A stretch of 64,000 nt of DNA from IMG/VR virus record IMGVR_UViG_3300037010_003311, positions 1-64,000 of that record; one strand, given 5' to 3'. Numbering within the stretch: the stretch's first letter is position 1; the number at the start of each line of letters is the position of its first letter. A program made the translations under genes and the position numbers. This document shows, piece after piece, positions 3,804 to 60,118 of this stretch. The notes beneath the pieces are model-generated. The model had not been told where the DNA came from and ran no database searches. It worked only from the letters and a program-made list of their open reading frames with translations.

Positions 3804-4565
3804 ATGAAAAAATTGTTAGTTGCGAGTATGAGTGGTGGATTAGATTCAGCCACTTTGGTCCGTAAAGCATTAGGGGAAGGATATATAGTTCTTCCCGTAA
3901 ATTTTCAATATGGTCAAAAAAACTATATTGAATCCGTCGCTCAAAGCAATCTTATCGAATTTTTCGATAAGAAATTTCCAAACCAAATTTTAAAAACGGT
4001 TAGTATAGACACCACCCGTATTATTTCGGACTTTATTGTCCAATACCAAAGTGCTAGAGATAGTGGTTTGGTATTGGAGAAAACCGGGGAGGAGTTCTAT
4101 ACCCCAAGCCGAAATCTTTTATTTATGACCCTATGTGCGGTCATAGGTGAAATTACGGCAATAGGTAGTGGATACGATGAGATCAGTATTGGTCTCGGTA
4201 TTCATAAACATAGTAGTGAAAACTACAAAAAGGACTACTGGGATATAACCCCAGAGTTCGTAAACCGGTTACAAAACCTGCTGGAGTTAAATGATAGTGT
4301 GAAAATCAATATCTATTCTCCATATGTGGAAGAATTCAAATCTGGTATCATTCAAGATGCCGAAGATATGAATCTTCCATTTTCTTTAACTTGGTCATGC
4401 TATGATCCGGTTTTAGAAATCCACGAAGATGGATTTTCTTCGAAAAAAAATATTTTTAAACCATGTAAAGCATGCGAAGCATGTCTCGAAAGAGATTCAC
4501 AAGCCCGTAAAATTGGAATATATGGAATTAATGATTATTTCATAGAAACTAAAATAGCAAACTAA
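3804..4565 (+). CDS. queC: 7-cyano-7-deazaguanine synthase
   Basis: SGGLDS PP-loop, YGQK, P.RN, TWSCY and PCxxCxxC zinc motif. Confidence 0.93.
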   Translation: MKKLLVASMSGGLDSATLVRKALGEGYIVLPVNFQYGQKNYIESVAQSNLIEFFDKKFPNQILKTVSIDTTRIISDFIVQYQSARDSGLVLEKTGEEFYTPSRNLLFMTLCAVIGEITAIGSGYDEISIGLGIHKHSSENYKKDYWDITPEFVNRLQNLLELNDSVKINIYSPYVEEFKSGIIQDAEDMNLPFSLTWSCYDPVLEIHEDGFSSKKNIFKPCKACEACLERDSQARKIGIYGINDYFIETKIAN

Positions 4566-47610: not shown

Positions 47611-48378
47611 ATGTTAACCGAGCAAGATAAATTAAAAATCGTTTTAAAAAGTATGTCTAAAAAAAGATATAAAGCAGCGTTAAAAGAGCTTAACAATATT
47701 CCGTTATTTAAAGCTGATGGCAACTATCCGTTGTCGTTAGATGTTAGAGCTGTAATGGCGAATGAGGGTTCGATTGGTTTGGCTAAACTTTTAAGAGATA
47801 CGTTTAGATTTGATTTAACAGATCCAAACGTTAAAGATACCCCAAGTAGAGTAGCTAGTATGTGGGTAAATGAACTTATGGTTGGCAGATATACGGATAA
47901 ACCACGTCTGGAAGCATTTCCCGTCGAGGAAAAACATTTAAGTAAACATAGTATAGAAATGTTGCACGAAGATGCCTCTGTTTTAGAGTACGATGGGATA
48001 ATCATTAAAAAGATTGATGTTCGATCATTATGTTCGCATCATCTTATGCCTTTCTTTTCTGATGGTAAAAAGTCTTTTGCTTTAGTAGCTTATATACCAA
48101 CAACTAAGTTTTTAGGTATTAGTAAAATTCAACGTTTATCTAATTGGTATGGTGCAAGACCATCACTACAAGAGCAATTAACTTGGTCAATATATAAAGA
48201 GATGTGTGACACTCTTGGTACAGACGATGTATTTGTAATTATGAAAAACATTACACATACTTGCGAAACTCTACGTGGAGCTAAAACTGAAGATGGTAGT
48301 ACTACTACTATGTTCTATGGTGGAAAATTTAAAGATATCAAGAAACGTAATGAAGTAATCAATTTGGCAGCAGATTAA
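47611..48378 (+). CDS. folE: GTP cyclohydrolase I
   Basis: DTP.RVA, SLCSHHLMPF, GISKI.R, LQE, HTC..RG. Confidence 0.93.
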   Translation: MLTEQDKLKIVLKSMSKKRYKAALKELNNIPLFKADGNYPLSLDVRAVMANEGSIGLAKLLRDTFRFDLTDPNVKDTPSRVASMWVNELMVGRYTDKPRLEAFPVEEKHLSKHSIEMLHEDASVLEYDGIIIKKIDVRSLCSHHLMPFFSDGKKSFALVAYIPTTKFLGISKIQRLSNWYGARPSLQEQLTWSIYKEMCDTLGTDDVFVIMKNITHTCETLRGAKTEDGSTTTMFYGGKFKDIKKRNEVINLAAD

Positions 48379-48418
48379 TCGTTTAGGTTAAGTTATATCC
48401 AAATTAGAGGAGGTAATT

Positions 48419-48877
48419 ATGGAGAATAATGCAATTAATGATCTATGGTTTCTACCATTAGATTTCATTGAAAAGACCGAAAACGATAAGCGTTTAGTGT
48501 ATAGTGATACTGATTCTGTGGTGGGAAATTCAATTATTATAGTAAATGGTAAACCTATTAAAATTGAAGATTTTTATAATTCTTTACCTAATAACTATAT
48601 TGAAGAAAAAGATCATCACTTTGTAAAAAAAAGTGATGGTTTTGTAACGTTAACCGTTAATGATAATCATGAGCTCATAGATAAAGAAATTATTTATTGT
48701 ATGAAGCATTTAGTAAAAAAAAGATTTTTCCGAATTAAAACTGATACAAATGAAGTAATAATCACAGAGGATCATTCATTGATGGTTAAAAGAAATGGTT
48801 ATTTAATTGGTATAAAAGTTAAAGAACTGATGGAAGGTGATGAAATATATGAAATTTCAGAATCCCCCACTTTGTAG
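48419..48877 (+). CDS. family B DNA polymerase fragment (32-aa N-extein ending YSDTD) fused to split-intein N part
   Basis: YSDTD|SVVGNS block A, ITEDH block B; ORF ends after about 120 intein residues. Confidence 0.88.
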   Translation: MENNAINDLWFLPLDFIEKTENDKRLVYSDTDSVVGNSIIIVNGKPIKIEDFYNSLPNNYIEEKDHHFVKKSDGFVTLTVNDNHELIDKEIIYCMKHLVKKRFFRIKTDTNEVIITEDHSLMVKRNGYLIGIKVKELMEGDEIYEISESPTL

Positions 48878-49022
48878 AACGTGCTCTAATAAATTGATTG
48901 ATGATTCAATTTGGCAAAAATATATTAATGGTGAAACCGATCTAAAGGATAAAAAATTTTTCAATAATTTTTATTCTAAACTTAAAAAAAGGATATCAAA
49001 TGATATTAAAATTGAAAAATGA
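48849..49022 (+). CDS. small CxxC ORF between the split-intein halves (possible homing endonuclease remnant)
   Basis: MKFQNPPLCRTCSNKL; overlaps both flanking ORFs in a third frame. Confidence 0.45.
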   Translation: MKFQNPPLCRTCSNKLIDDSIWQKYINGETDLKDKKFFNNFYSKLKKRISNDIKIEK

Positions 49023-50004
49023 TTTTATAGTTGAAGATTTAGGTATTCGAGAAGAATGGGTTTATGATATAGAAGTTAAAGATAATCATAATTTCTTTGC
49101 AAATAATATCTTAGTACACAATTCCGCATATTTGCTATTCGATTTACCATTCAATAAATTTGATGATATCCGGCAACTGGTTGATTATATACAGCAGTTG
49201 TCGACTAAAATTGATACAGAATACAATAATGCTTTAAATTATTATGGTTCAATGTTTGCGGGGTTAAATCCTGAATTCAATATTATGAAATTTAAATCAG
49301 AAGTTGTAGCGTATCAAGGCTTCTTCAACACCAAAAAGTTTTATGCATTGAGTAAAGCTTGGGACGAAGGAGCTTTCTTTGATACGCCAGAAATTAAAAA
49401 GACCGGTGGCCAAATTAAGAAAGCAGACGTTACTAAGATATCGGAACAGCTTTTATCCTTAGTCTATAAAATACTTGTTTTACCATCAGAAACTAAAGAT
49501 CTTGAGTCATTATATAAAAAGATCTTTATTGAGACTAAAAACCGTATTAAAATGCAACTAAAGCATGATATAGATAATCTTGATTTTAAAAGTTTCGGTG
49601 TACCAAAAAAATGGAGTTTTAAAGCTACAAAAGATATGCAGTGGGTAACCGGTGCAAGATTGTATAATCAAATAGTGGAGGATCTTCACCGCCCTGGAGA
49701 TTCAATGTTAACTCTTCCAATTAAAGGGAATTTTAACATTCTTCAAAACTATGATGAACAATTATCTTTAAAAAATAAAGATTTAACTTATCTACTTAAA
49801 GCTGATGATTATAATGATATATCTACTTTAAGTATTCCACCGAATATGAATTCTGAACAAGTACAAAAACTATCAGCGGCATTTGAAAAATATTCAATTC
49901 GAGTAGATTTTGATCAGGTAATGTTATTTAATATAGATATGAAATTGGAAGTATTTGAAAAACTATTTCCCCCAGAAATTAAATTATTGGTAAAGGGAGA
50001 TTGA
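49000..50004 (+). CDS. split-intein C part (41 aa) fused to family B DNA polymerase C-terminal palm/thumb
   Basis: own AAAGGA RBS; VYDIEV..NHNFFANNILVHN|SAY; downstream FKSE and KKFY PolB-like motifs. Confidence 0.88.
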   Translation: MILKLKNDFIVEDLGIREEWVYDIEVKDNHNFFANNILVHNSAYLLFDLPFNKFDDIRQLVDYIQQLSTKIDTEYNNALNYYGSMFAGLNPEFNIMKFKSEVVAYQGFFNTKKFYALSKAWDEGAFFDTPEIKKTGGQIKKADVTKISEQLLSLVYKILVLPSETKDLESLYKKIFIETKNRIKMQLKHDIDNLDFKSFGVPKKWSFKATKDMQWVTGARLYNQIVEDLHRPGDSMLTLPIKGNFNILQNYDEQLSLKNKDLTYLLKADDYNDISTLSIPPNMNSEQVQKLSAAFEKYSIRVDFDQVMLFNIDMKLEVFEKLFPPEIKLLVKGD

Positions 50005-51089
50005 TGTTAATAGATCCTGCGAATACTCATATTTGTACCCCAGAACTTTATCAACAGTTAATGGATATGATTAAAAAACAACAAATTGCATTTCATCAAT
50101 TTTATAACGTTGAGATAGAAACTGATGAATTACCATTTCTAAATTTCATGCAAACCTATAAAGATAATCAAGCTACAAAGGTTTTAAATAAAACCTACTA
50201 CGATATCGAAACTTATGGTGTCAATGAAAATGGTGAAATAGTAGATGAATTCCCGGAAGTAGATAAAGCTGCGTTTCCAGTAAACGCTGTAGCCTTATAT
50301 AACAATATTACTAATGAAGCTACCATTATATCTTATGTAAATGATTGTAACATTACTGATCCAGTAGCTTTACAAGCTGGGGTTGAAGAATACTATGCTA
50401 AAACGGTCATAGAAAATCCAATCTATGAAATTCAAGATTTAAAAATCATAGTCGAAATAGTTGAAAATGAAAAACAACTTTTCCAATCATTTCATACCAA
50501 AATTCATTCGTTAGATACACTAATGTTGATTGGATTCAATAGTTCATTATTCGATGATGTATATATGATGAATAGAGGATCTAAGCTTTTTGGTGAGGAA
50601 GTATATCATAGTATGGTTTCAGAATTTCAAGTTACCAAATATAGTAGCCGGGTATTTGAGTGGCCAGATTATCTTTTGGTTGATCTATTAAAACTATACC
50701 AACCAGTTGATTCTGGTGGTATGGGCCTAGGCCAATCATTATCAAGTTATAAGCTAGATAATATTGCCGAAGTTGAATTAGGTATACAAAAATTAGATCT
50801 TGATGGGGGTTTCGTAAAAACCTATAGAACCAACATCGTTCAATATTTGACATACAACCTGATGGATACACTATTGACTTTTAAATTAGATCAAAAACTT
50901 CAATTTATTGAGCAAATTTATAGCTTATCGAAGTATAATAATTCGTCGATTGGTGCAACTATTAATGGTCGGTCAATCATGTATAAATATAGAAACGATC
51001 TTATTTATGCTAATCAAAAAAAATTGATCCGTGCTAAAAAATATTCTAGGGAAGTTTTTTATCAGATTGAAAAGGAGGTTAAAAAGTGA
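50004..51089 (+). CDS. family B DNA polymerase 3'-5' exonuclease domain as a separate gene
   Basis: ExoI YDIET, ExoII GFNS..FD..Y, YKLD.IA..ELG..K, ExoIII YN..D. Confidence 0.88.
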   Translation: MLIDPANTHICTPELYQQLMDMIKKQQIAFHQFYNVEIETDELPFLNFMQTYKDNQATKVLNKTYYDIETYGVNENGEIVDEFPEVDKAAFPVNAVALYNNITNEATIISYVNDCNITDPVALQAGVEEYYAKTVIENPIYEIQDLKIIVEIVENEKQLFQSFHTKIHSLDTLMLIGFNSSLFDDVYMMNRGSKLFGEEVYHSMVSEFQVTKYSSRVFEWPDYLLVDLLKLYQPVDSGGMGLGQSLSSYKLDNIAEVELGIQKLDLDGGFVKTYRTNIVQYLTYNLMDTLLTFKLDQKLQFIEQIYSLSKYNNSSIGATINGRSIMYKYRNDLIYANQKKLIRAKKYSREVFYQIEKEVKK

Positions 51090-51529
51090 AACAACTTGGA
51101 TCCGAGAATTTAACTATAATTGATAAATTAGAAAATATTAATAAGTTAACTTCCGATATAGACCAAAATATAAAACTGTGTAAATCAATTATAACAGTAA
51201 ATAATAAAGTCTCCGAGGATACATTAGAGCTCATCGAATCTATAAATTTAGATATTGATAAGCTTAAACAAGAGCAATTTTATATACTCGAAAATAATTA
51301 TAATTCAAAACTAACGTTCCGTGGCATCGAATATCGAGTATTAGAATTGATTAAAATTAAAGAAGCGTTAAAAGCTAAAATGGATGCAATTATTGATTAT
51401 TTAAAAGTCATGGAAGATCAGGAGATTGATCAATACCACCTTAGAGTCCAAACCTTATTAAATACAATAAAAACGGAATACCGAGATATAAATAGAGTGT
51501 TGTATCTCCACAATACTAAAAAGGCTTAG
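51086..51529 (+). CDS. coiled-coil hypothetical protein
   Basis: GTG after AGGAGG. Confidence 0.6.
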   Translation: MKQLGSENLTIIDKLENINKLTSDIDQNIKLCKSIITVNNKVSEDTLELIESINLDIDKLKQEQFYILENNYNSKLTFRGIEYRVLELIKIKEALKAKMDAIIDYLKVMEDQEIDQYHLRVQTLLNTIKTEYRDINRVLYLHNTKKA

Positions 51530-51540
51530 AAAGGCGCAAG

Positions 51541-52383
51541 ATGAAAGAAAACGAAAAAAATAGATTCGAGTTAAGTGAAAGGGATCCATATCTTTCACAA
51601 ACTTTTTATAGCTTAGAGGGTGAAGGAATGACTCTAGGGCGAACAGCTTTATTCTTAAGAATAAATGGTTGTAATGCTACTTGTACATTCTGTGACACAA
51701 GTTTTAGTATCAAGGGTGAAGAAAAATATAATCTTGTAAATATGGCAGAACCAGAATTTGTGGATTATCTTCGTAAAGAATACCAGCATCTTGATATTGA
51801 ACATGTGAATTCTATTACTATAACCGGTGGTGAACCACTTAAAAATATTAAACAGTTTAATAGAATGTTTAAAAATATTCTACATGTGTTTCCTAAAGTG
51901 GAGCATGTAATATTCGAAACTAATGGTACCTACCTAAGTTCGACTAGTAACTGTTTAAAGCTATTACGAGAAATTGGAGAATTTATTAATATAGATCAGA
52001 TTAACTTTACTTTAAGTATCAGTCCAAAACTATCCAGTAAAATGAGCTGGAGTAAAACAGATGATGCTGAAGTTTTATCTTGGTATAACGATATTCTTCA
52101 TAATTATAAATATTATCTAAATCGTTATTTAGATATACAAATGAAGTTTATTCAATTTCCAAATGATAGTGAATACTTTAATTTGAATCAAAATCTAATA
52201 AATTTATGTAAGGAATACAATATTCCAAACTATAAGATATTGATTATGCCTTTTACTCCACCAGATCCACTTGGTAAAGATAGTGCTATTTGGACAGAAT
52301 CTAAAGATACTGCGGCGAGATATGCGTTAAAGCATAATTTTAGATACAGTCCTCGTATCCATATTGATCGCAAATTGGATTAA
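51541..52383 (+). CDS. queE: 7-carboxy-7-deazaguanine synthase (radical SAM)
   Basis: FYSLEGEG, FLR..GCNxxCxFCDT, TGGEP, ETNG, ISPK, SPRIH. Confidence 0.92.
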   Translation: MKENEKNRFELSERDPYLSQTFYSLEGEGMTLGRTALFLRINGCNATCTFCDTSFSIKGEEKYNLVNMAEPEFVDYLRKEYQHLDIEHVNSITITGGEPLKNIKQFNRMFKNILHVFPKVEHVIFETNGTYLSSTSNCLKLLREIGEFINIDQINFTLSISPKLSSKMSWSKTDDAEVLSWYNDILHNYKYYLNRYLDIQMKFIQFPNDSEYFNLNQNLINLCKEYNIPNYKILIMPFTPPDPLGKDSAIWTESKDTAARYALKHNFRYSPRIHIDRKLD

Positions 52384-52385
52384 TT

Positions 52386-53666
52386 ATGGGAAATGTTAGT
52401 ATCCGGGATATTACTGCTTATGTTTGGAATACATCTCTTAATAACTACAGTCCGGTAGCTACATCTGATTTCGAAGTACATAAAGATCCGATCAGGACCC
52501 AACACAGTGATGGTAACCAGTATCGATTAAAGATTAATGCTATCTCAAGTACTATAGATGAGGTTAATCCAGTTTTTAATATGTTTGGTATTATTAATAC
52601 AACTGATACAAATAATGAGCATTTCTGGCTTAAAAAATGTTTTAAAGTTGAGGTTAACATATCATCTCAAATTAAAGTAATTTATCTGTTACCAATGTCC
52701 TATAATGTTAACTTGGAGAAATCAGTAACTTATATCTGTATGGAAATGAGCGAACGATTATTAGAGCTTGGAAATTTTAAATACTTTACGGAATTAGGAT
52801 TATCCGATTTTACAACATTTTTCAAAAATCGGATAACTGAAGCAAATAACTATTTAAATGAATTGGCCAAGTTAGCTTGCAAGCTTGATAAGTCTTTTGA
52901 AGGATTTAAGATTATTCCGAGAGCACCAGTTAGTACTATGGATCGGGCTTCTAATCAGATAAATAATAATAACATTATGCAGCTAGCCGATCAGTTATTC
53001 GAACTCGGCTGGTTTAAATGTCCAGCATATGCGAGTTATGATTCCTTTGATTTACAAGCTATGTCAGCTAACCCAAAAGATAAGTGTATTATAACGTATA
53101 AGATACTTGATCTAGGGGATATTCGAAAAATAACTAACGCAGTAAATGTTACTACTATGGCTCTATATTCTGGGTTACAAGATCAAACAGTGAAGCCATT
53201 TTTTGATACCGCATTTTTTGATAATTTTATCAATAAGAAAGCTACATTTGAATTTTCAAAATATGGTTCTTGGGTAAACTGTCTTATGGATGGTGGGCTT
53301 GAACAGGGTGATAGTACTAATCGTATTGAATTGGAAGCATTATTTGGTTCCAAAGAAAATATGGAAGCTAAACTCTGTTGTTTAAAACAACTCGTAGCTA
53401 TTAATCCACAAGTCTATTCATATGTATTACCAAATATGTTGTTAGGCGCAGATTTTGGGGTTTATAATCTTGGCTCGGGTGGTATTACTGCCTATGATTT
53501 TATAGTAGCTATAAACTATTCGGCCACCAATTTAGATGGCCGAACGGATGGTAGCAATTTAACGTTTACTACTAAATTAAAAACGCTAAAATTTAATTAT
53601 CCGATAATACAAACGGATTTTTATAATAACTTAAATATTAATGGGACACCATGTTTAAATGGATGA
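52386..53666 (+). CDS. hypothetical protein
   Basis: 426-aa ORF, no motif recognised. Confidence 0.75.
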   Translation: MGNVSIRDITAYVWNTSLNNYSPVATSDFEVHKDPIRTQHSDGNQYRLKINAISSTIDEVNPVFNMFGIINTTDTNNEHFWLKKCFKVEVNISSQIKVIYLLPMSYNVNLEKSVTYICMEMSERLLELGNFKYFTELGLSDFTTFFKNRITEANNYLNELAKLACKLDKSFEGFKIIPRAPVSTMDRASNQINNNNIMQLADQLFELGWFKCPAYASYDSFDLQAMSANPKDKCIITYKILDLGDIRKITNAVNVTTMALYSGLQDQTVKPFFDTAFFDNFINKKATFEFSKYGSWVNCLMDGGLEQGDSTNRIELEALFGSKENMEAKLCCLKQLVAINPQVYSYVLPNMLLGADFGVYNLGSGGITAYDFIVAINYSATNLDGRTDGSNLTFTTKLKTLKFNYPIIQTDFYNNLNINGTPCLNG

Positions 53667-53697
53667 CATTAATAACAATAACCATTAAAGGGAAATC

Positions 53698-54168
53698 ATG
53701 GGAACGCACAAACGAAAGTCGAAGCGAGTAGAACTCCTTGAATTATCAAGGCAGCAGGAATTAAGAAGTGTATTAACTCCAGAAGAATACGATTATAAAT
53801 TTAAGTCGTTTCTGACAGAGTTTAATATTGATCCGGCTTATATGAATTTTTATAAATTTTTACAAGATCCGGAATTCGAATTACCTCTTCAGGGGCTTTT
53901 AAGTCTTATACGTGGCGCTGGTTTTGATCTTCAGTTAACACTAGTGAATAAAAATTTTAAATACGATGATGCAAAAGAGTGGGACCAATTCCTAACTCAT
54001 TTAAAAAATGTAGTATTTAAATACCATGTACCTAAAAAGATTATTGACCCAACAGATGGAAAACCTCTCAAAAAGAGAGTTAGTTCGAAAACAATAATGA
54101 CTTCTATGAACGAGGTTGATACAATATCTACTTCAGAATTACAAAATCTTATGGATGAGGTTTGGTAA
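53698..54168 (+). CDS. hypothetical protein
   Basis: ORF with RBS. Confidence 0.65.
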   Translation: MGTHKRKSKRVELLELSRQQELRSVLTPEEYDYKFKSFLTEFNIDPAYMNFYKFLQDPEFELPLQGLLSLIRGAGFDLQLTLVNKNFKYDDAKEWDQFLTHLKNVVFKYHVPKKIIDPTDGKPLKKRVSSKTIMTSMNEVDTISTSELQNLMDEVW

Positions 54169-54189
54169 TTTAATATATAAAGAGGTTTT

Positions 54190-54942
54190 ATGACAGGATT
54201 ACCAGGGGCGGGAATACCAGGACAAGGTGTACCACAATATCAACAACAGGTACCATCATCATATCAACAAGTTGGTGTACCACAAGCTACGGTGCCAATG
54301 CAACAAGCTACGGTGCCAATGCAACCAATGCAACAAGCTACGGTGCCAATGCAACCAATGCAACAAGCTACGGTGCCAAGCAACGGATTACCAGGACCGA
54401 CGAATACTAGTACCTACCGAAATTTAATTACTGTAGGAACTATTACCCATACTGGTAACCAACTATTTGAAATTAATGGTAGAATTGATATTACCGATAA
54501 ATTCCCAGATGAATTTGCGTTTGTTTGGATTGCACCATCAGTTATTAATAATACTAAACAATCAAATAGAAGTTATGTATTGACTGATAAAATTAATATG
54601 AAATTCAGTTCAGAAGAGTTGCATGGATTAGCAGAAGCTTTAACAGAAGCTGGTATGTGGGGACGTTGTTCTTTTATTAAATTTAGTGATCCAAAAAAAT
54701 CGGGGTCGAACAATAACACTACCTCAAATGATTCAAAAAAGTTTACTGTTACTGCAAGCGTAGAAGGTGATAAAGTTAAAGTATTTATGAACATCATACA
54801 GGGTTCTAAAAAAATAGCTATGCCATTAGAAAAGTATACCGCATTAGGTTTAGCTCATCAAATACATGATTTAGCTACGGAAATTAATAGAATGAAATTT
54901 GAGCTAGATAGAGAAAGAGCAAAAAATTTTATTAAACAATAG
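54190..54942 (+). CDS. candidate Whirly-like ssDNA-binding protein with Gln/Pro-rich N-terminus
   Basis: IAP..RSY...K..MKFS..E, F.DP.K, KKFTV, IAMPL in the same order as plant Whirly motifs. Confidence 0.55.
   Translation: MTGLPGAGIPGQGVPQYQQQVPSSYQQVGVPQATVPMQQATVPMQPMQQATVPMQPMQQATVPSNGLPGPTNTSTYRNLITVGTITHTGNQLFEINGRIDITDKFPDEFAFVWIAPSVINNTKQSNRSYVLTDKINMKFSSEELHGLAEALTEAGMWGRCSFIKFSDPKKSGSNNNTTSNDSKKFTVTASVEGDKVKVFMNIIQGSKKIAMPLEKYTALGLAHQIHDLATEINRMKFELDRERAKNFIKQ
54283..54379 (+). repeat. in-frame 21/30-bp tandem repeat (QQATVPM(QPM))
   Basis: CAAGCTACGGTGCCAA four times. Confidence 0.9.
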
Positions 54943-54953
54943 GATTAGACAAT

Positions 54954-55406
54954 TTGAAACTTGATTCTAATATTTCGAATCAGACTTATACTGATTATCT
55001 ATTATCAAAATCAAATCGGTCTTTACGAGATACCGGGATACCCGGTATTCATATTCATTATTCCAGGAATAGGAGCGAAGTTTTTTTCCGGCCAACCCTA
55101 AAGATAAATAAAAAAGATATAATGAAACATCGTAATTTTGATTTAAACTATTTTGGGCTTTGGATAGCAATCCGATATTACAATAAAATAGTTTTAGATT
55201 TTGCAACAGATGAAAAAAATAAGGATACTCGGTTAAATATAAATACAGTTTTCGATTTTATGTTATTCAATAACGTAAAACTTGATCAACAAGTATACGA
55301 AGCTATTGCAAATAGAGATGAAAAATCTTTACAATTGCTTTATGAAATTACTTTCAATCAAAAACCATTTGATTTCGAAAGTATTATTAACGATATACAA
55401 ACGTGA
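54954..55406 (+). CDS. hypothetical protein
   Basis: TTG after AGGA. Confidence 0.55.
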   Translation: MKLDSNISNQTYTDYLLSKSNRSLRDTGIPGIHIHYSRNRSEVFFRPTLKINKKDIMKHRNFDLNYFGLWIAIRYYNKIVLDFATDEKNKDTRLNINTVFDFMLFNNVKLDQQVYEAIANRDEKSLQLLYEITFNQKPFDFESIINDIQT

Positions 55407-55433
55407 AAAATATAAAGGTTAAAAGGATTAATT

Positions 55434-55865
55434 TTGATAGATTTAAAAATGAGTGAAACAGAAGTATCTCCACCAGCAATTGCGGAAGTAAATGCCTCTA
55501 CCGATTTAGATACTGGTGGGAAATATACAAAGATTATAAATCTTACGAATCATAAACTAACGGAAATTCTTAGTGGGATCCAAATTGATTTCTCTGAGAG
55601 TGGCGTAGCTAGAGTTGATTGTAGAGATGAAATCATTTATCGTGATCCATCTGGTTATACAATTTCTCGTACAAAATATGTACATATTGTTGGCATCGAT
55701 TTGGATAATATTAATCCAAATCATTTATACATAGTTTCAGCTGTGGTATTGAATGCCATTCGTGAACGTGGATTACAATTTGATAATATTGTGGCACCAG
55801 CTAAAATCATTAGGGATAGTGATAACAACGTTATTGCGGCTAGGGGGTTCCGAGTAAATGGTTAA
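55434..55865 (+). CDS. phage hypothetical protein
   Basis: NLT.H, SGVARV, YIVS, RD..N.I...GF motifs. Confidence 0.65.
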   Translation: MIDLKMSETEVSPPAIAEVNASTDLDTGGKYTKIINLTNHKLTEILSGIQIDFSESGVARVDCRDEIIYRDPSGYTISRTKYVHIVGIDLDNINPNHLYIVSAVVLNAIRERGLQFDNIVAPAKIIRDSDNNVIAARGFRVNG

Positions 55866-57418
55866 TGGAAAAGTTAAAATTAGAAATTGAGCAAAAATTA
55901 TTCAATTCCAGGAACCGAATCGATTATGTATATTTGAAAAAATATCCAGAAATCTTAAATCGGGCCCAAGAGCATATGACTGGATTTGATGATAAGATTA
56001 CTTCATCTCAATTAGTTTTATTTTTTTACGAAGGTATATTGTCACCACCTAAGTGTCAGAACGCACATTGTGAAAAATATGTTAAGTGGTGGTCGAATAA
56101 AAAATGCTTTTCCAAATATTGTTGCATAAAATGTAGTAATTCTGATCCAGAAAAAGATCAAACAACTATTAAAAATAATATGGAAAAATATGGTGTACCA
56201 AGAGCATCTATGACCACTGAATCTAAACAGAAACTTTTAAATACTAATTTGTGCCGGTATGGTGTAAGTAGTACCGCTCAATTAAAAGAAGTAAAAGATA
56301 AAGCTAAACAAACCTGTTTAAAAAAGTATAATTATATATCAAGTTCTATATCCGATATAAAAAATCTGGAAGAATATTCTAATCGGGATTTTATAATTGA
56401 AAATTTTATAAACGATAATATTTTTGATTTATATGGATTTCGAAATTATTTTAATTGTGGTCAAGTTGCTGCTCATAATACTTTAAACCGCTTAAATATT
56501 GATTATAATAAGTACGCGGCAAGAAATACTTTTATAGAGCGGATCGTTGAAGATTTTTTAAAAGAAAATAATATAACTTTTATCAAAAATGATAGAATGG
56601 TTCTTAATGGTAAAGAACTTGATTTCTATTTACCAGAGCATAAGCTTGGAGTAGAATTAAATGGTTTATATTGGCATAGTTATAATACAAAAACAAAAAT
56701 TTTAAAATCAAAAAAAGATATTAAAAATTTTCACCGTATTAAAACCGATAGATGTGAAGAACAGAATATACAACTTTTTCATATATTCGAAAATGAAATT
56801 CTTTATAAGTTTGAGATATGGAAATCAGTATTAGAAAACACTCTTGGTAGAAGCATACAACTAGAAGCCGAGGATCATACTATTAAGCCGGTACCCAAAT
56901 ATGATATAAAACCATTTCTAGAAGCTAATCACTTACAAGGTTACTGCTCAAGTTCAATTGCTTATGGTCTGTATTATAATAACAATAATACTGGAATACC
57001 AGAGCTAATAAGCATTATGACTTTTACTAAAGGTAGTGGAAGTGCTGATTGGGAGCTAATGCGATTTTGTAATAAACTTGGTTATAATGTTTATGGTGCA
57101 GCAAGCAGATTGCTTAAAGCATTTCGGGTTGGGTACAAAGGAAATATTAAAACCTGTGTAAATAGGCGCTGGTCGAATGGTAACTTATACCGACAACTTG
57201 GTTTCCAAGAAATTGGTATAAGTGAACCGAATAAATTCATTATTAATTTTAATAAGATTAATAATTTATATAGTAGACTAGCTTTTCAAAAATACAAATT
57301 GCCAAAAAATTCAAATTTCGATAATACTTTATCAGCTGATGAAAATATCATAAATAATGGTTATGGAATCATTTGGGATTCTGGTCAAATAAATTTTATC
57401 TTAAAAGGAGATATATGA
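55865..57418 (+). CDS. Hef-like free-standing homing endonuclease with C-terminal GNAT-like region
   Basis: N-terminal Cys cluster, KYG repeats, ELDFY..GVELNGLYWHS nuclease motif, NHLQG..ELMRF..GAASRL..LGF..WDSG. Confidence 0.75.
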   Translation: MEKLKLEIEQKLFNSRNRIDYVYLKKYPEILNRAQEHMTGFDDKITSSQLVLFFYEGILSPPKCQNAHCEKYVKWWSNKKCFSKYCCIKCSNSDPEKDQTTIKNNMEKYGVPRASMTTESKQKLLNTNLCRYGVSSTAQLKEVKDKAKQTCLKKYNYISSSISDIKNLEEYSNRDFIIENFINDNIFDLYGFRNYFNCGQVAAHNTLNRLNIDYNKYAARNTFIERIVEDFLKENNITFIKNDRMVLNGKELDFYLPEHKLGVELNGLYWHSYNTKTKILKSKKDIKNFHRIKTDRCEEQNIQLFHIFENEILYKFEIWKSVLENTLGRSIQLEAEDHTIKPVPKYDIKPFLEANHLQGYCSSSIAYGLYYNNNNTGIPELISIMTFTKGSGSADWELMRFCNKLGYNVYGAASRLLKAFRVGYKGNIKTCVNRRWSNGNLYRQLGFQEIGISEPNKFIINFNKINNLYSRLAFQKYKLPKNSNFDNTLSADENIINNGYGIIWDSGQINFILKGDI

Positions 57419-58737
57419 AATATGCAGCGGTATTAAGCTCACAACCTGGTGCGGATGTATATACGCCAATCTTTAATTACTTCCCGGATTACTTAATTAC
57501 GCTTGGTGAACCAACAGCTGGTAATGCAAATAAGATTAAAACAGCAGGTTGGGATATCCAAACAATTGTAAAGCATGCAAAAAAAATAATCTATAAAGAG
57601 AATATGGGGGATGGAAAAAATCTTTACATAGATTCAGGTGGTTTTCAAATCATCAAAGGGCACATCACTAGAAATATGCTATCGGTATACGAGCAATGCT
57701 TCCATGATATTATTGAAAAAATGTATAGTGACATCTATCGTATATTTTCATTAGATATTTTTAATTTTAAGATGTCCCCAGAAGATGCCCATTACTATAA
57801 TATGGTTAGTATTCGTGACAGTATTGATCTAATTAAAATGATACCATCTATTGCAGATAAAGAACTATTTGTAATTCAAAGTACGAATAAGAATATGTTT
57901 GATCTTTGGAAACAGATTATGGTAGAACAAAAAGTTTTTGATTATTTTAAACTATGGTCACTTGGTGGGTTAGTTGGTTTAAAAAAAGATACTAATGCTG
58001 ATTTCAGTCATGCAGTACCAGCTACTTTGTGGTTACTAACCTATGCTAAGCACTATAATGGTACAATTAACCAGGTGCACTGGTTAGGGCAAAGTTCAAG
58101 GCTTGCGTTTTTAAGTATGGCAATGATTGAATCATTATATGGTATAAACATGACTGCTGATAGCAGTCAGTTAATAAAATTCGCCCCGATTGAGCAGAAG
58201 ATGCCATTTATGTCTTTTGATGATGATATACAAGATTTCGTACTAGCCCAAGATCATATATCGATCGAAAAAATGCTTGCTAAACATTCACTTGGGTCAG
58301 CACATAGTAAAAAAGCGTTACAAAGTTTTAAAAACTATGCAATTAATAGCTCAACGTTTGTTGTTGCAGATCATGATGGTTCGGAAGAAGAACTATCCGA
58401 AGCCGATTACGATGATGCAATTTCTAATTTTTCTAAAAAATCGAAAAGCAAATTCAGTATCCCAAATGAAGATATAATTGAATTGCAGTCTCAAAATATA
58501 TTTTACGAGATGAAATTTGCTGAGAAGATTGTTACAGAATTGCTCAAGCATCCACTAGAGCATTGGAATACCGATAACCTAAAAGAGGTACACCCAATTC
58601 TTAATCGCGGCCGTATTGCTAAAGAGTTTAATAACAATCTAAACTATTTTAGAATCTTCGCTCCAATCATTGAAGCTGGTGATATTAAAGCGGCCGATGA
58701 AGTTATGTACAGTGTTCTAGAAAAATTCTCGAGATAA
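57415..58737 (+). CDS. divergent DpdA/TGT-like guanine transglycosylase
   Basis: YIDSGGFQ, SLD, VIQ, SLGGLV, H.LG, ADSS TGT-barrel motifs; context with queC, queE and folE. Confidence 0.72.
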   Translation: MKYAAVLSSQPGADVYTPIFNYFPDYLITLGEPTAGNANKIKTAGWDIQTIVKHAKKIIYKENMGDGKNLYIDSGGFQIIKGHITRNMLSVYEQCFHDIIEKMYSDIYRIFSLDIFNFKMSPEDAHYYNMVSIRDSIDLIKMIPSIADKELFVIQSTNKNMFDLWKQIMVEQKVFDYFKLWSLGGLVGLKKDTNADFSHAVPATLWLLTYAKHYNGTINQVHWLGQSSRLAFLSMAMIESLYGINMTADSSQLIKFAPIEQKMPFMSFDDDIQDFVLAQDHISIEKMLAKHSLGSAHSKKALQSFKNYAINSSTFVVADHDGSEEELSEADYDDAISNFSKKSKSKFSIPNEDIIELQSQNIFYEMKFAEKIVTELLKHPLEHWNTDNLKEVHPILNRGRIAKEFNNNLNYFRIFAPIIEAGDIKAADEVMYSVLEKFSR

Positions 58738-58746
58738 GGAATAGTT

Positions 58747-58926
58747 ATGGAAAAAAAATTTAAATTAGTTGAAATACTAAATGGTTGTAAAACTGGTGAA
58801 AGTATAACTCTTACCGAAGATGAATACAATAAGCTTAATCTAAAAAATGTTTTTAAAATCCATAAAGGGAATAACGTGCAAGAAATTGCGGTCGACAATA
58901 CATATTTTAAAAGCTTAAAATCATGA
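58747..58926 (+). CDS. 59-aa hypothetical protein (not in ORF track)
   Basis: AAGGA RBS; ATGA overlap with the next gene. Confidence 0.55.
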   Translation: MEKKFKLVEILNGCKTGESITLTEDEYNKLNLKNVFKIHKGNNVQEIAVDNTYFKSLKS

Positions 58927-59387
58927 GTGGTACAAACCACTCGGATACTATCTTAAAGACGATTGTCTTAATAAGTTGCGTCTCCAAGAAAAAGGCTGGT
59001 AAGCAACCAGCATGTAACTTATATGGTGGCCCATTGTTTTCAAGCAGTTGGGAATACGCCAAAAATCTTAAACCAGACTTCATTCATATTATGAGTGCAA
59101 AATATGGGTTAATTGATTATAAAGAGGTTATTGAACCATATGATGTTACATTAAATGATATGGATAAAGAAACAATACAAGTATGGTCAGATAAAGTATT
59201 CGAAGATTTAAAATCTAAATACGATATCGAAAAAACCAAGTTTATTATTCTTGCGGGTAAAAACTATTATTCTGGATTTATCGATAAATTACCACATATT
59301 GAATTACCACTTGGTAGTCTCCCTATTGGTAAAAGAGTACAATATCTTCAAAATCTGAATAAAAAATATAATCAAGGATTGTTATGA
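58923..59387 (+). CDS. DUF6884/YaaA-like protein
   Basis: LISC..KK, A..LY.G..F, SAKYGLI, I.PYD, AG..Y, IGKR. Confidence 0.75.
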   Translation: MSGTNHSDTILKTIVLISCVSKKKAGKQPACNLYGGPLFSSSWEYAKNLKPDFIHIMSAKYGLIDYKEVIEPYDVTLNDMDKETIQVWSDKVFEDLKSKYDIEKTKFIILAGKNYYSGFIDKLPHIELPLGSLPIGKRVQYLQNLNKKYNQGLL

Positions 59388-60118
59388 AGTATAAGGAAGA
59401 TTCCAGGGATAATCAAACGTTATTTCTATGGTTAGATCTTGAGACTACTGGTCTTAATAGTAAGACTTGTGGTATTATTGAAGCAGCTGGATGCTTTGAA
59501 TTAAATGGAGAAGTGTTAAAAGAATTTGAACTTTTAATTAACCCGTTTACATATCCAAATCAAATTGAAGTACAAGAAAAGGCTCTAGCTGTAAACAATC
59601 GAACTATTCCAGAAATACAAACATTCCTGGATCAGAAACAATGTCTAGACTGGTTAAATAGTTGGATCGAATACTACATAACACAATATGGTTGTAATAG
59701 GCCATATATAGTTGGGTATAATGTTGGATTCGATGTAGATTTCGTTAAAGAGTGGTACGCGGCTAATAACGTGAAGTATTCATTGTATTTTCAATATAAA
59801 TTTATTGATGTGATGCAACATGTTATGATGTTAAGCTATCTTGGAGTACTTGATCCTTATAATAACACCCTAAAAGAGATGTGTTTAAAGTTTGGGATTA
59901 ATATTGATAATGCTCATACGGCAATTGCTGATATCCGAGCAACAAGAGAATTAAGTCAAAAGTTAGTACAAACTCATAAATATATACAGTGGTTAAAACC
60001 AACACCTATAGAGGAGGGAAGCACAGACATAGATAGTATTGTAGCAAACTGGGGTTCAAAAAGAGTTACTGAAAAATTAGGTTTAGTACAACATGATGTT
60101 ACTAAAGATTATAATTAG
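59384..60118 (+). CDS. DnaQ-like DEDDh 3'-5' exonuclease
   Basis: DLETTG, GYNV.FD, AH.A.AD. Confidence 0.88.
   Translation: MKYKEDSRDNQTLFLWLDLETTGLNSKTCGIIEAAGCFELNGEVLKEFELLINPFTYPNQIEVQEKALAVNNRTIPEIQTFLDQKQCLDWLNSWIEYYITQYGCNRPYIVGYNVGFDVDFVKEWYAANNVKYSLYFQYKFIDVMQHVMMLSYLGVLDPYNNTLKEMCLKFGINIDNAHTAIADIRATRELSQKLVQTHKYIQWLKPTPIEEGSTDIDSIVANWGSKRVTEKLGLVQHDVTKDYN

What the first reader, a model, noticed from the sequence alone, without database searches (positions are those of the whole stretch)
47611..59387. 7-deazaguanine DNA-modification genes interleaved with the replication genes, with a divergent transglycosylase
Seen: folE, queE, a TGT-fold gene and a DUF6884-like gene surround the polymerase pieces; queC lies about 43 kb upstream; no queD was recognised. 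Established: FolE, QueD, QueE and QueC make preQ0, phage DpdA proteins place 7-deazaguanines in DNA against restriction, and some Campylobacter phages replace dG extensively with a 7-deazaguanine derivative. The 440-aa TGT-like protein has an acidic insertion and no obvious C-terminal Cys zinc site. Inference: the genome is G-modified, possibly via a modified dNTP used by the fragmented polymerase. The unassigned 426-aa ORF directly after queE is a candidate new pathway enzyme.
Basis: partly seen in the sequence, partly recalled or inferred. Interest (0 to 1): 0.68.

Follow-up and report, generated by a model that had tools for sequence, protein, structure and literature searches.

The report
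Jumbo-phage 7-deazaguanine DNA modification module
An uncultured jumbo phage carries a complete gene set for making 7-deazaguanine bases and, most likely, swapping them into its own DNA after replication, using a new and very divergent branch of the known DpdA base-exchange enzymes plus a small DpdC-like tailoring protein; the 426-aa ORF after queE is probably not part of the pathway.

Summary
FolE (47611-48378), QueE (51541-52383), a TGT-fold protein (57415-58737), a DUF6884 protein (58923-59387) and QueC (3804-4565) are real and sit among split PolB pieces. QueD is not missing: it lies just outside the window (genome 71444-72064), as does a Gat-QueC-like fusion (90835-92271) next to the PolB palm piece.

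The 440-aa protein matches no Pfam, PHROG, NCBIfam or PDB sequence. Its confident model (pLDDT 88) matches only tRNA-guanine transglycosylases (Z 18.4), and the catalytic-type Asp residues are invariant. Profile-profile comparison links it only to phage DpdA2 (90%). That distance is about the same as DpdA1 and DpdA3 show to DpdA2, so it is a new subfamily-level DpdA clade. The FolE-PolB-QueE-X-DpdA order is conserved in about 290-kb metagenomic phages. The missing Cys/Zn site and missing Pfam TGT hit are normal for phage DpdAs.

DUF6884 is the DpdC domain (dPreQ0 to dADG in DNA). It also flanks dpdA in two unrelated phages and appears fused to a DpdA-like barrel in archaea.

ORF426 is a fast-evolving, lineage-restricted ORF with tail or hub-like leads.

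Verdict: post-replicative G to 7-deazaguanine exchange. It is a new variant of a known kind, and the chemistry is untested.

The parts
3804..4565 (+). QueC (preQ0 synthase), 253 aa
   Evidence: PF06508 E 1.4e-26; TIGR00364 E 1e-22. SGGLDS PP-loop and C-terminal CxxCxxC motif.
47611..48378 (+). FolE (GTP cyclohydrolase I), 255 aa, with an N-terminal extension of about 65 aa
   Evidence: PF01227 E 5.7e-35; phrog_2197 E 2e-40; NF006826 E 2e-33.
48419..50004 (+). N-terminal PolB piece, carried on two ORFs (48419-48877 and 49000-50004) that bear the N and C parts of an intein
   Evidence: Intein_splicing N part at residues 43-144 of ORF1 and C part at residues 18-41 of ORF2. Relative L004 has one uninterrupted 319-aa gene at this position.
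50001..51089 (+). PolB exonuclease-domain piece, 362 aa
   Evidence: PF03104 E 9e-8. tblastn to T4-like and jumbo-phage DNA polymerases at 24-29% identity. The palm piece is a separate gene at genome 88924-90168.
51541..52383 (+). QueE (7-carboxy-7-deazaguanine synthase), 280 aa
   Evidence: Radical_SAM and Fer4_12; phrog_2076 QueE-like E 2.9e-31; TIGR03963 E 4e-17; CNATCTFC cluster motif.
52386..53666 (+). ORF426. Function is unproven. It is probably a fast-evolving virion or tail-associated protein and not a pathway enzyme.
   Evidence: No family hit. 6 homologues by word search and 5 representatives in 1.84e9 proteins. AF2 pLDDT 42.6. Atlas leads are Sipho_Gp37, DUF5048 tail protein and YqbQ/gpD. 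Positional equivalents carry PG-hydrolase domains.
55865..57418 (+). HNH/Vsr-like homing endonuclease, 517 aa. It is inserted just upstream of the dpdA-like gene, and its stop overlaps that gene's ATG.
   Evidence: phrog_3339 homing endonuclease E 6e-95; DUF7487. Absent at this position in relatives L004, L006, L022 and L023.
57415..58737 (+). DpdA-like DNA-guanine transglycosylase, 440 aa, from a new DpdA2-related clade
   Evidence: AF2 pLDDT 88.4. All top PDB matches are TGTs, Z 18.4. D73 (in DSGGFQ), F77, D114, H222 and D249 (in DSS) are invariant in 50 homologues. hhalign to a DpdA2 alignment gives 90%, E 1.6e-6. Synteny with FolE and QueE is conserved.
58923..59387 (+). Stand-alone DUF6884 (DpdC-domain) protein, 154 aa. 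Candidate tailoring enzyme acting on dPreQ0 in DNA.
   Evidence: PF21818 E 6e-38. PADLOC DpdC models E 2e-6 and 9e-5. CxxxK (C19..K23) and MSAKYG motifs. DpdC is reported to carry DUF6884. Homologues sit next to dpdA in phiFN37 and in the Rosebush cluster. An archaeal cluster looks like a fusion with a DpdA-like fold.
59384..60118 (+). DEDDh (RNase T-type) exonuclease, 244 aa. It is a replication or repair neighbour and is not shown to belong to the pathway.
   Evidence: PF00929 E 2e-11; PADLOC DEDDh E 3e-19. The same order DpdA-DUF6884-RNase_T occurs in L004.

Best explanation
This is a phage-encoded system that modifies its own DNA with 7-deazaguanine after replication.

Base synthesis. FolE, QueD, QueE and QueC convert GTP to preQ0.

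Base exchange. The 440-aa TGT-fold protein is a DpdA-type transglycosylase. It exchanges guanine in double-stranded phage DNA for the 7-deazaguanine base. The proposed mechanism is the double displacement known for TGT and DpdA: D249 in the DSS motif acts as nucleophile, D73 in DSGGFQ as general acid/base, and D114 and H222 bind the base.

Tailoring. Two tailoring enzymes are encoded. The stand-alone DUF6884 protein directly downstream carries the DpdC domain and could hydrate dPreQ0 in DNA to dADG. A Gat-QueC-like fusion beside the PolB palm gene could yield the archaeosine base (dG+).

Expected benefit. The modified DNA should resist restriction enzymes and other DNA-targeting defences.

What is shown: gene content, motif integrity, fold, conservation of catalytic-type residues and conserved synteny.

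What is inferred: DNA rather than tRNA as substrate, the identity of the final base(s), and the extent and sequence context of modification.
For: Pathway genes:
- The preQ0 pathway is complete and its motifs are intact.
- QueD has the CxxxHGH motif, so it is a QueD and not the DpdL decarboxylase.

The transglycosylase:
- The model is confident (pLDDT 88.4, pTM 0.88).
- All 50 listed PDB matches are tRNA-guanine transglycosylases, Z 16.4-18.4 with about 300 residues aligned; Foldseek probability is 1.00.
- In BFVD the model matches phage TGT/DpdA-like proteins, including the 464-aa Vibrio phage nt-1 protein (same length as its DpdA2) at E 1.8e-6.
- The family has 171 homologues. D73, S74, G76, Q78, D114, H222 and D249-S-S are invariant.
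- The motifs are collinear with DpdA2: D73/H222/D249 here against D76/H235/D266 in nt-1.
- hhalign of A1 against the DpdA2 alignment gives 90.1%, E 1.6e-6 over 176 columns, including DSGGxQ and HxLG.
- After D249 the model has a short beta-hairpin followed by a helical insertion. Solved bacterial DpdA shows the same order of elements in its Ins8 insertion (PMC10164549).

Synteny:
- FolE - PolB pieces - QueE - X - ... - DpdA-like is kept in relatives at 59%, 46%, 44% and 36% identity. These lie on 92-296 kb contigs.
- Known DpdA2 phages (ACP17, Moby) also place these genes among replication genes.

DUF6884:
- It matches DpdC models, and DpdC is reported to carry this domain.
- DpdC converts dPreQ0-DNA to dADG-DNA (PMC10164549).
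- It sits next to dpdA in phiFN37 and in the Rosebush cluster.
- An archaeal cluster of 575-aa DUF6884 proteins matches the DpdA-like model over residues 1-417.

Gat-QueC-like protein:
- It has a QueC domain at E 3e-29 and an MCS N-terminus like that of MiCath Gat-QueC.
- It aligns collinearly with MiCath Gat-QueC from residue 94, E 3e-21.

tRNAs:
- The genome encodes only tRNA-Ala, tRNA-Val and tRNA-Gln, and none is a queuosine-family tRNA.
Against: - No biochemical or sequencing-signal evidence of modification could be obtained.
- The protein is invisible to Pfam TGT and to HMMER searches against DpdA1-4 phage genomes. Homology therefore rests on fold, motifs and one 90% profile-profile hit.
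- No residue-level structural superposition was available to prove that D73 and D249 occupy the catalytic positions.
- The Zn site that pins the insertion in bacterial DpdA and in TGTs is absent.
- Bacterial DpdA needs the ParB-like ATPase DpdB, and none was found in the 226 kb held.
- The DUF6884 protein is only half the length of DpdC and matches DpdC positions of about 48-110 only.
- Rosebush, which has a partial DUF6884 homologue, carries dPreQ0 with only trace dADG.
- The N-terminal domain of the Gat-QueC-like protein has no Pfam GATase hit. On its own it does not align significantly with MiCath.
- CATG is strongly avoided (O/E 0.60). This would be unnecessary if every G were replaced.
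- The record is about 81% complete.
Confidence: 0.75

Rival explanations
1. The 7-deazaguanine is built up to a deoxynucleoside triphosphate and incorporated by the split family-B polymerase during replication, giving complete replacement of dG. The TGT-like protein would play a salvage or base-to-nucleotide role.
For: - Pathway genes are physically interleaved with polymerase pieces. FolE and QueE flank the N-terminal and exonuclease pieces, and the Gat-QueC-like gene follows the palm piece. This linkage is conserved in relatives.
- An ADG nucleoside was reported in cells infected by Campylobacter phage CP220 (quoted in PMC10516641).
Against: - A DpdA-like protein with invariant catalytic-type Asp residues is present. 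This makes a nucleotide-level route unnecessary.
- No MazG or dGTP-clearing enzyme, no guanylate kinase and no QueF were found in the 226 kb held.
- Cui et al. 2023 conclude that all known phage 7-deazaguanines are inserted after replication by DpdA.
- Known DpdA2 phages show the same interleaving with replication genes.
- CATG avoidance argues against total G replacement.
Confidence: 0.07
2. The TGT-fold protein acts on RNA. The phage would make preQ0 and insert it into host tRNAs, by queuosine- or archaeosine-type modification, to tune translation. The phage DNA would stay unmodified.
For: - The closest solved folds are tRNA enzymes: arcTGT, bacterial TGT and eukaryotic TGT.
- DNA as substrate is not demonstrated.
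Against: - The Zn subdomain of the tRNA enzymes is absent. The 440-aa protein also lacks the long C-terminal region of the 576-aa arcTGT, where only chain residues 34-354 align.
- The only detectable sequence-profile link is to phage DpdA2.
- A DpdC-domain gene, whose characterised relative acts on DNA, follows directly.
- The gene lies in the replication module.
- The three phage tRNAs (Ala, Val, Gln) are not Q-family substrates.
Confidence: 0.08
3. ORF426 (52386-53666) is a new enzyme of the pathway.
For: - Its start lies 3 nt after the queE stop, on the same strand.
- A gene of about 400-670 aa always follows queE in relatives.
Against: - It belongs to no family, and only 5 representatives exist in 1.84e9 proteins.
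- It is 39-40% identical to the homologue in a relative whose DpdA is 59% identical. It is undetectable in relatives whose DpdA is 36-46% identical.
- The positional equivalents in those relatives carry DPBB_1/RlpA-like or endolysin/tail-transglycosylase domains.
- Language-model and shape leads point to tail, hub or gpD-like proteins.
- No cofactor or catalytic motif was recognised.
Confidence: 0.08

Closest known systems
Phage DpdA2 (Vibrio phage nt-1 YP_008125322, KVP40, Acidovorax phage ACP17, Stenotrophomonas phage Moby)
   Same: - Similar size: 403-464 aa against 440 aa.
- Collinear DSGG(F/L)Q, HxLGxxS and DS(S/T) motifs.
- Neither has a CxCxxC Zn site or a Pfam TGT hit.
- Both are encoded beside FolE, QueE and QueC among the replication genes of large T4-like phages.
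- DpdA2 is the only subfamily with a profile-profile link to the window's family: 90%, E 1.6e-6.
   Different: - HMMER with the family profile does not find DpdA2 in nt-1, even at E 10. tblastn against 50,697 phage records finds nothing real.
- With the DpdA2 profile as query, the window's protein scores 33 bits. That is about the same as DpdA3 (30) and DpdA1 (26), which are separate named subfamilies.
- The window's protein has a length-variable acidic disordered loop.
Bacterial DpdABC system (Salmonella Montevideo; PMC10164549)
   Same: - A TGT-fold transglycosylase paired with a DUF6884/DpdC-domain protein.
- Candidate counterparts of the three active-site Asp are invariant: D95/D130/D256 in DpdA against D73/D114/D249 here, matched by order and spacing.
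- A beta-hairpin followed by a helical insertion comes after the nucleophile.
   Different: - No CxCx2Cx22H zinc site.
- No DpdB (ParB-like ATPase) in the genome held.
- The DpdC-like protein has 154 aa, against about 310.
- No dpdD-K restriction genes were noted. Here the system would protect a phage genome rather than mark host DNA.
Queuovirinae-type phage systems (phage 9g, MiCath: QueE, Gat-QueC, QueD, FolE, DpdA1, then polymerases)
   Same: - Same gene vocabulary, including a Gat-QueC-type fusion, and placement next to DNA polymerase genes.
- 9g carries dG+ on about 25% of its G.
   Different: - DpdA1 has about 306 aa and lacks DSGG.
- hhalign of A1 against MiCath DpdA1 is not significant, although GG, HxxG and DSS line up.
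- The window's genome has both a separate QueC and the fusion, and its genes are scattered over about 90 kb.
DpdA3 (Cellulophaga phage phiST CGPG_00065; Campylobacter phage CP220), the 'complete replacement' subfamily
   Same: A distant TGT-fold protein encoded between the CDG pathway genes and the polymerase genes.
   Different: - No profile similarity.
- Foldseek E is only 0.02 to M4SLA5, the 259-aa phiST protein that has the length of CGPG_00065.
- The family profile finds nothing in CP220 or phiST.
- phiST DpdA3 has 259 aa and lacks the DSGG and DSS motifs.

Membership tests
TGT/DpdA transglycosylase superfamily | (beta/alpha)8 TIM-barrel TGT fold | tested here: met
   AF2 pLDDT 88.4. VIA Z 18.4, rmsd 4.2, 301 residues aligned to 1j2b. 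All 50 rows shown are TGTs. Foldseek probability 1.00.
TGT/DpdA transglycosylase superfamily | Three active-site Asp residues: general acid/base, base-binding and nucleophile. They are invariant in TGT and DpdA (PMC10164549). | tested here: inconclusive
   D73 (in DSGGFQ), D114 and D249 (in DSS) are invariant in 50 homologues. DSGGxQ aligns with DpdA2, and DSS aligns with DpdA1 and DpdA2. No residue-level structural superposition was available to confirm their positions.
TGT/DpdA transglycosylase superfamily | Structural Zn site CxCxxC...H | tested here: not met
   The protein has a single Cys (C95). The motif is also absent from the DpdA1, DpdA2 and DpdA3 representatives tested, so it does not discriminate among phage DpdAs.
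TGT/DpdA transglycosylase superfamily | Sequence match to Pfam PF01702 | tested here: not met
   No hit even at E 10. Controls: MiCath DpdA1, nt-1 DpdA2 and phiST DpdA3 also give no hit.
Phage DpdA2 subfamily | Recognisable sequence homology to nt-1 DpdA2 | tested here: inconclusive
   HMMER and tblastn find nothing. hhalign profile-profile gives 90%, E 1.6e-6. Its single-sequence score against the DpdA2 profile is about the same as those of DpdA1 and DpdA3. It is best treated as a sister clade rather than a member.
Phage DpdA (any subfamily) | Encoded together with preQ0 synthesis genes in a virus | tested here: met
   FolE, QueD, QueE and QueC are in the same genome. Synteny is conserved in four relatives.
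Phage DpdA (any subfamily) | Inserts a 7-deazaguanine base into DNA | not testable with these tools
   This needs LC-MS/MS or a guanine-exchange assay.
DpdA3 | Homology to phiST CGPG_00065 or the CP220 protein | tested here: not met
   hhalign probability 0.05%. The A1 profile finds nothing in CP220 or phiST. BFVD E 0.02.
DpdC / DUF6884 | PF21818 domain with the CxxxK and LSAxxG motifs | tested here: met
   130.5 bits against a cut-off of 30. C19..K23 and MSAKYG are present. PADLOC DpdC models give E 2e-6. The motifs are described in PMC11701544.
DpdC / DUF6884 | Full-length DpdC architecture (about 310 aa) and dPreQ0-to-dADG activity | tested here: not met
   The protein has 154 aa and matches DpdC model positions of about 48-110 of 312 only. 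Activity is not testable here.
Gat-QueC | Class-II (Ntn, Cys2) glutamine amidotransferase domain fused N-terminally to QueC | tested here: inconclusive
   The QueC domain covers residues 242-474, E 3e-29. The protein starts MCS, like MiCath Gat-QueC. BLASTP to MiCath Gat-QueC covers residues 94-476, E 3e-21. The N-terminal domain has no Pfam GATase hit, and its alignment alone gives E 0.8. The Atlas gave no hit.
preQ0 pathway (FolE-QueD-QueE-QueC) | All four enzymes present with catalytic motifs | tested here: met
   QueD CxxxHGH, QueE CxxxCxxC, and QueC SGGLDS plus CxxCxxC.

The most novel reading that the evidence does not exclude
The DpdA-like protein and the 154-aa stand-alone DUF6884 protein form a minimal two-gene phage 'DpdA/DpdC' writer that needs no DpdB. 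DUF6884 would be the self-sufficient catalytic core that hydrates the nitrile of dPreQ0 in DNA, through its conserved Cys of CxxxK, to give dADG. With the Gat-QueC-like enzyme, the phage would carry two different 7-deazaguanines (dADG and dG+). The archaeal 575-aa proteins that appear to join a DpdA-like barrel to DUF6884 would do both steps in one polypeptide. That would extend 7-deazaguanine DNA modification to Bathyarchaeota-type archaea.
Probability: 0.25. Interest if true: 0.7.

Novelty: new variant of a known kind. Interest (0 to 1): 0.52.

Why it matters
Phage 7-deazaguanine DNA modification is established. The catalogue of DpdA subfamilies (bDpdA and DpdA1-4) was built from cultured viruses. 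This window adds three things.

- A large family of at least 171 clusters, found only in metagenomes and typical of jumbo phages. It is as distant from DpdA2 as the named subfamilies are from each other, and no cultured phage carries it. Sequence-based surveys therefore undercount G-modified phages.
- Evidence that the DpdC domain (DUF6884) recurs next to dpdA in unrelated phages and appears fused to a DpdA-like fold in archaea. That gives DUF6884 a testable function outside the bacterial Dpd islands.
- A practical point: genomes of this clade may resist restriction-based cloning and show shifted nanopore signal at G.

Tried and rejected
- Sequence searches for the 440-aa protein found nothing useful. 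This covers Pfam, PHROGs, NCBIfam and PADLOC, phmmer and a profile against PDB sequences, and tblastn against 50,697 phage records at E 1e-5 and at E 10.
- megablast of the whole region against phages gave no match.
- The A1 profile against the nt-1, CP220, phiST, 9g and HVTV-1 genomes gave nothing. Pfam TGT on the same genomes also gave nothing, so neither negative result is informative on its own.
- ORF426: the word search found 6 proteins. The exhaustive profile search found 5 representatives plus one weak repeat match. The AF2 model had pLDDT 42.6 and was too poor for a fold search. There is no homology to the positional equivalents in relatives. PHROGs and PADLOC at relaxed E gave nothing.
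- N-terminal domain of the QueC fusion: the PDB sequence search, the Atlas and Pfam at E 10 gave nothing.
- The genes downstream of DpdA in distant relatives are not DpdC-like.
- The DUF6884 neighbourhoods in the Bradyrhizobium, Caulobacter, Myxococcus and Burkholderia phages are annotated only as hypothetical proteins. They neither support nor contradict the dpdA link.
- No alternative genetic code was needed or used.

Full report
**Source and setting**

The window is the first 64 kb of a 226,657-bp linear IMG/VR virus record, which CheckV estimates as 81% complete. GC content is about 32% and nearly all genes are on the + strand. No cultured phage is close. megablast of the region finds nothing. 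The PolB exonuclease piece is only 24-29% identical to T4-like and jumbo-phage polymerases.

**Checking the observation**

Family scans confirm the following genes:

- FolE, 47611-48378.
- Two small ORFs carrying the N and C halves of an intein, plus PolB N-terminal sequence, at 48419-48877 and 49000-50004.
- A PolB exonuclease piece, 50001-51089.
- QueE, 51541-52383.
- An unassigned 426-aa ORF, 52386-53666.
- A 517-aa homing endonuclease, 55865-57418.
- A 440-aa ORF with no family, 57415-58737.
- A DUF6884 protein, 58923-59387.
- A DEDDh exonuclease, 59384-60118.
- QueC, 3804-4565.

Motifs are intact in QueE (CxxxCxxC) and in QueC (SGGLDS, CxxCxxC).

QueD is not in the window, but it is in the genome at 71444-72064 and has the QueD signature CxxxHGH. 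It is therefore not the DpdL decarboxylase variant.

A second QueC-domain protein of 478 aa lies at 90835-92271. It sits directly after the PolB palm-domain gene at 88924-90168.

No QueF, ParB-like, guanylate kinase or MazG gene was found in the 226 kb held.

**The transglycosylase**

By sequence, the 440-aa protein is an orphan with respect to curated libraries and solved structures.

It belongs to a sizeable metagenome-only family. The family has 171 clusters at E of 1e-3 or better, members of 399-617 aa, and no Pfam domain. Many members lie on contigs of 90-296 kb.

A 50-sequence alignment (A1) shows these invariant residues: D73-S-G-G-F-Q, D114, G184-G185, H199, H222-x-L-G-Q-x-S and D249-S-S.

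The AlphaFold model built on that alignment is confident (pLDDT 88.4, pTM 0.88). Its matches are as follows.

- In the PDB, all listed matches are tRNA-guanine transglycosylases: Foldseek probability 1.00, and VIA Z 16.4-18.4 with about 300 residues aligned, best to archaeosine TGT 1j2b.
- Among viral models, it matches uncharacterised phage proteins and annotated phage TGTs. These include a 464-aa protein of Vibrio phage nt-1 (E 1.8e-6), which has the length of that phage's DpdA2. The 259-aa phiST protein, which has the length of DpdA3, scores only E 0.02.
- In the ESM Atlas, the nearest clusters are viral hypothetical proteins, one cluster in which 14% of members carry PF01702, and one cluster of DUF6884-bearing archaeal proteins.

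**Which DpdA?**

The A1 profile finds nothing by HMMER in the genomes of nt-1 (DpdA2), CP220 and phiST (DpdA3), 9g (DpdA1) or HVTV-1 (DpdA4). The Pfam TGT model fails on those genomes too, and on MiCath DpdA1, nt-1 DpdA2 and phiST DpdA3 as proteins. A missing Pfam hit is therefore normal for phage DpdAs.

I built a seven-member DpdA2 alignment (A3). hhalign of A1 against A3 gives 90.1% probability and E 1.6e-6 over 176 columns, which include DSGG(F/L)Q and HxLG.

As a yardstick, I ran the DpdA2 profile against single sequences.

| Query sequence | hhalign score | E-value |
|---|---|---|
| Window's protein | 33 | 0.0013 |
| phiST DpdA3 | 30 | 0.0021 |
| MiCath DpdA1 | 26 | 0.01 |

The window's family is thus about as far from DpdA2 as the already named subfamilies are. 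It is best described as a new subfamily-level clade whose nearest known relative is DpdA2.

The motif positions are collinear with DpdA2: D73/H222/D249 here against D76/H235/D266 in nt-1.

None of the DpdA1, DpdA2 or DpdA3 representatives has the CxCxxC zinc motif of bacterial DpdA and the TGTs.

After D249 the model shows a beta-hairpin followed by a helical insertion that contains the disordered acidic loop. The same order of elements is described for the Ins8 insertion of solved bacterial DpdA. This comparison is my inference from secondary structure only.

**Conserved context**

Four relatives keep the order FolE - PolB N pieces - PolB exonuclease piece - small ORF - QueE - a 394-672 aa ORF - ... 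- DpdA-like. QueD, or PolB palm pieces, lie nearby.

| Locus | DpdA identity to the window |
|---|---|
| L004 | 59% |
| L023 | 46% |
| L006 | 44% |
| L022 | 36% |

The linkage of the pathway to the split polymerase is therefore a clade property. It is not unique to this clade, however. The known DpdA2 phages ACP17 and Moby also place these genes between polymerase, primase/helicase and baseplate-hub genes.

**DUF6884 is the DpdC domain**

- The 154-aa protein hits PF21818 strongly and has that family's CxxxK and LSAxxG-type motifs.
- It also hits four PADLOC DpdC models (best E 2e-6, DpdC positions about 48-110 of 312). Its homologues in Fusobacterium phage phiFN37 and in Mycobacterium phage Rosebush hit DpdC models too.
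- A 2025 preprint states that DpdC carries DUF6884.
- DpdC converts dPreQ0-DNA to dADG-DNA (PMC10164549).
- In phiFN37 the best phage homologue (38% identity) lies exactly between dpdA and a queuosine-precursor transporter.
- In Rosebush it is gp8, beside the dpdA-queC-queD-queE-folE block.
- In the close relative L004 it abuts the DpdA-like gene.
- An archaeal cluster of 575-aa DUF6884 proteins matches the DpdA-like model over residues 1-417. This suggests a natural fusion.

There are caveats. The protein is half the length of DpdC. Rosebush DNA has dPreQ0 but only trace dADG. More distant relatives lack the gene. Other phages carry DUF6884 in neighbourhoods without annotation.

**The Gat-QueC-like protein**

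The 478-aa protein has a C-terminal QueC domain. It begins MCS, as MiCath Gat-QueC does. It aligns collinearly with that protein from residue 94 (E 3e-21). Its longest phage matches are annotated Gat-QueC fusions.

Its N-terminal domain gives no Pfam GATase hit and no significant alignment when taken alone. I therefore rate the amidotransferase assignment as likely but not shown.

**ORF426**

- It has six homologues, all in the nearest relatives. Only five representatives exist in 1.84 billion proteins.
- It is 39-40% identical to its L004 counterpart, where DpdA is 59% identical. It is not detectable in L006, L022 or L023.
- The genes at that position in L006 and L023 carry RlpA-like DPBB_1 or endolysin/tail-transglycosylase domains.
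- Language-model neighbours include tail-protein families, and the Atlas's own low-quality model resembles gpD/YqbQ/Gp37-type proteins.
- My own fold was unusable, at pLDDT 42.6.

The balance favours a fast-evolving virion or tail protein. It does not favour an enzyme of the pathway, but this is not proven.

**Mechanism and rivals**

The best reading (confidence about 0.75) has three steps. Step 1 is preQ0 synthesis. Step 2 is post-replicative G-to-7-deazaguanine exchange in duplex DNA by the DpdA-like enzyme. Step 3 is tailoring to dADG by the DpdC-like protein, to dG+ by the Gat-QueC-like protein, or both.

The final base and the fraction of G replaced cannot be read from the sequence. CATG is the only strongly avoided palindrome (O/E 0.60). 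That hints that protection is not total.

The dNTP/polymerase route (about 0.07) lacks any nucleotide-level enzymes and is made unnecessary by DpdA. A tRNA role (about 0.08) is disfavoured by the architecture, the DpdC neighbour, the replication context and the phage tRNA set of Ala, Val and Gln only.

**Limits**

- No chemistry or read-level signal was available.
- The homology claims rest on one confident model, invariant motifs and one 90% profile-profile hit.
- The genome is incomplete.
- In the held literature I found no description of this clade, or of a fifth phage DpdA subfamily. That library is not exhaustive.

Noticed in passing
window 48419-48877 and 49000-50004: The N-terminal PolB piece is carried on two ORFs. 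The first ends with an intein N-terminal splicing region and the second starts with the intein C-terminal region. Relative L004 has one uninterrupted 319-aa gene here, while L006 and L022 also carry intein pieces. This looks like a naturally split or degraded intein inside a polymerase that is already split.
   Followed up: partly
genome G000 88924-90168 (outside the window): The PolB palm-domain piece is a separate gene about 38 kb from the exonuclease piece, and the Gat-QueC-like gene follows shortly after it. The family-B polymerase is therefore encoded in at least three or four separate pieces.
   Followed up: partly
window 55865-57418: A 517-aa HNH/Vsr-like homing endonuclease sits immediately upstream of the dpdA-like gene, with a 4-nt overlap. 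It is absent at this position in all four relatives examined. L004 has a Tad6-family protein (PF25188) there instead.
   Followed up: partly
whole genome G000: CATG is the only strongly under-represented 4-bp palindrome (378 observed against 633 expected, O/E 0.60, z -17). GATC and TGCA are mildly low. G/C-containing 6-mers show no general avoidance. This suggests pressure from a host CATG-specific restriction system.
   Followed up: no
ESM Atlas cluster (row 5): A cluster of 575-aa, mostly Bathyarchaeota proteins carries PF21818 (DUF6884) and matches the DpdA-like model over residues 1-417 (TM 0.59). This is a possible DpdA-DpdC fusion in archaea.
   Followed up: no
L025 (Fusobacterium phage phiFN37) 4715-7024: A compact block of ParB-like, DpdA, DUF6884 and queuosine-precursor transporter genes. 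It looks like a phage version of dpdB-dpdA-dpdC that relies on salvaged preQ0.
   Followed up: partly
genome G000 70213-70815 and 70808-71428 (outside the window): ThyX (PF02511) is split over two overlapping ORFs just upstream of QueD. Relative L004 has a single 312-aa ThyX. The cause could be a frameshift, an assembly error or a real split.
   Followed up: no
L022 6884-8191: In a distant relative, QueE has 435 aa and carries intein/HINT signatures inside the radical-SAM enzyme.
   Followed up: no
window 2810-3790: A 326-aa protein with an LPP20 lipoprotein domain lies directly upstream of QueC, which is an odd neighbour for a pathway gene.
   Followed up: no
L022 18015-19271: A 418-aa WGR + PARP (ADP-ribosyltransferase) protein lies a few kb downstream of the DpdA-like gene in a relative.
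   Followed up: no
window 60161-61615: An rIIB-like protein (PHROG 609, E 3e-53) follows the module. Together with the PolB similarities, this points to distant T4-like ancestry for the clade.
   Followed up: no
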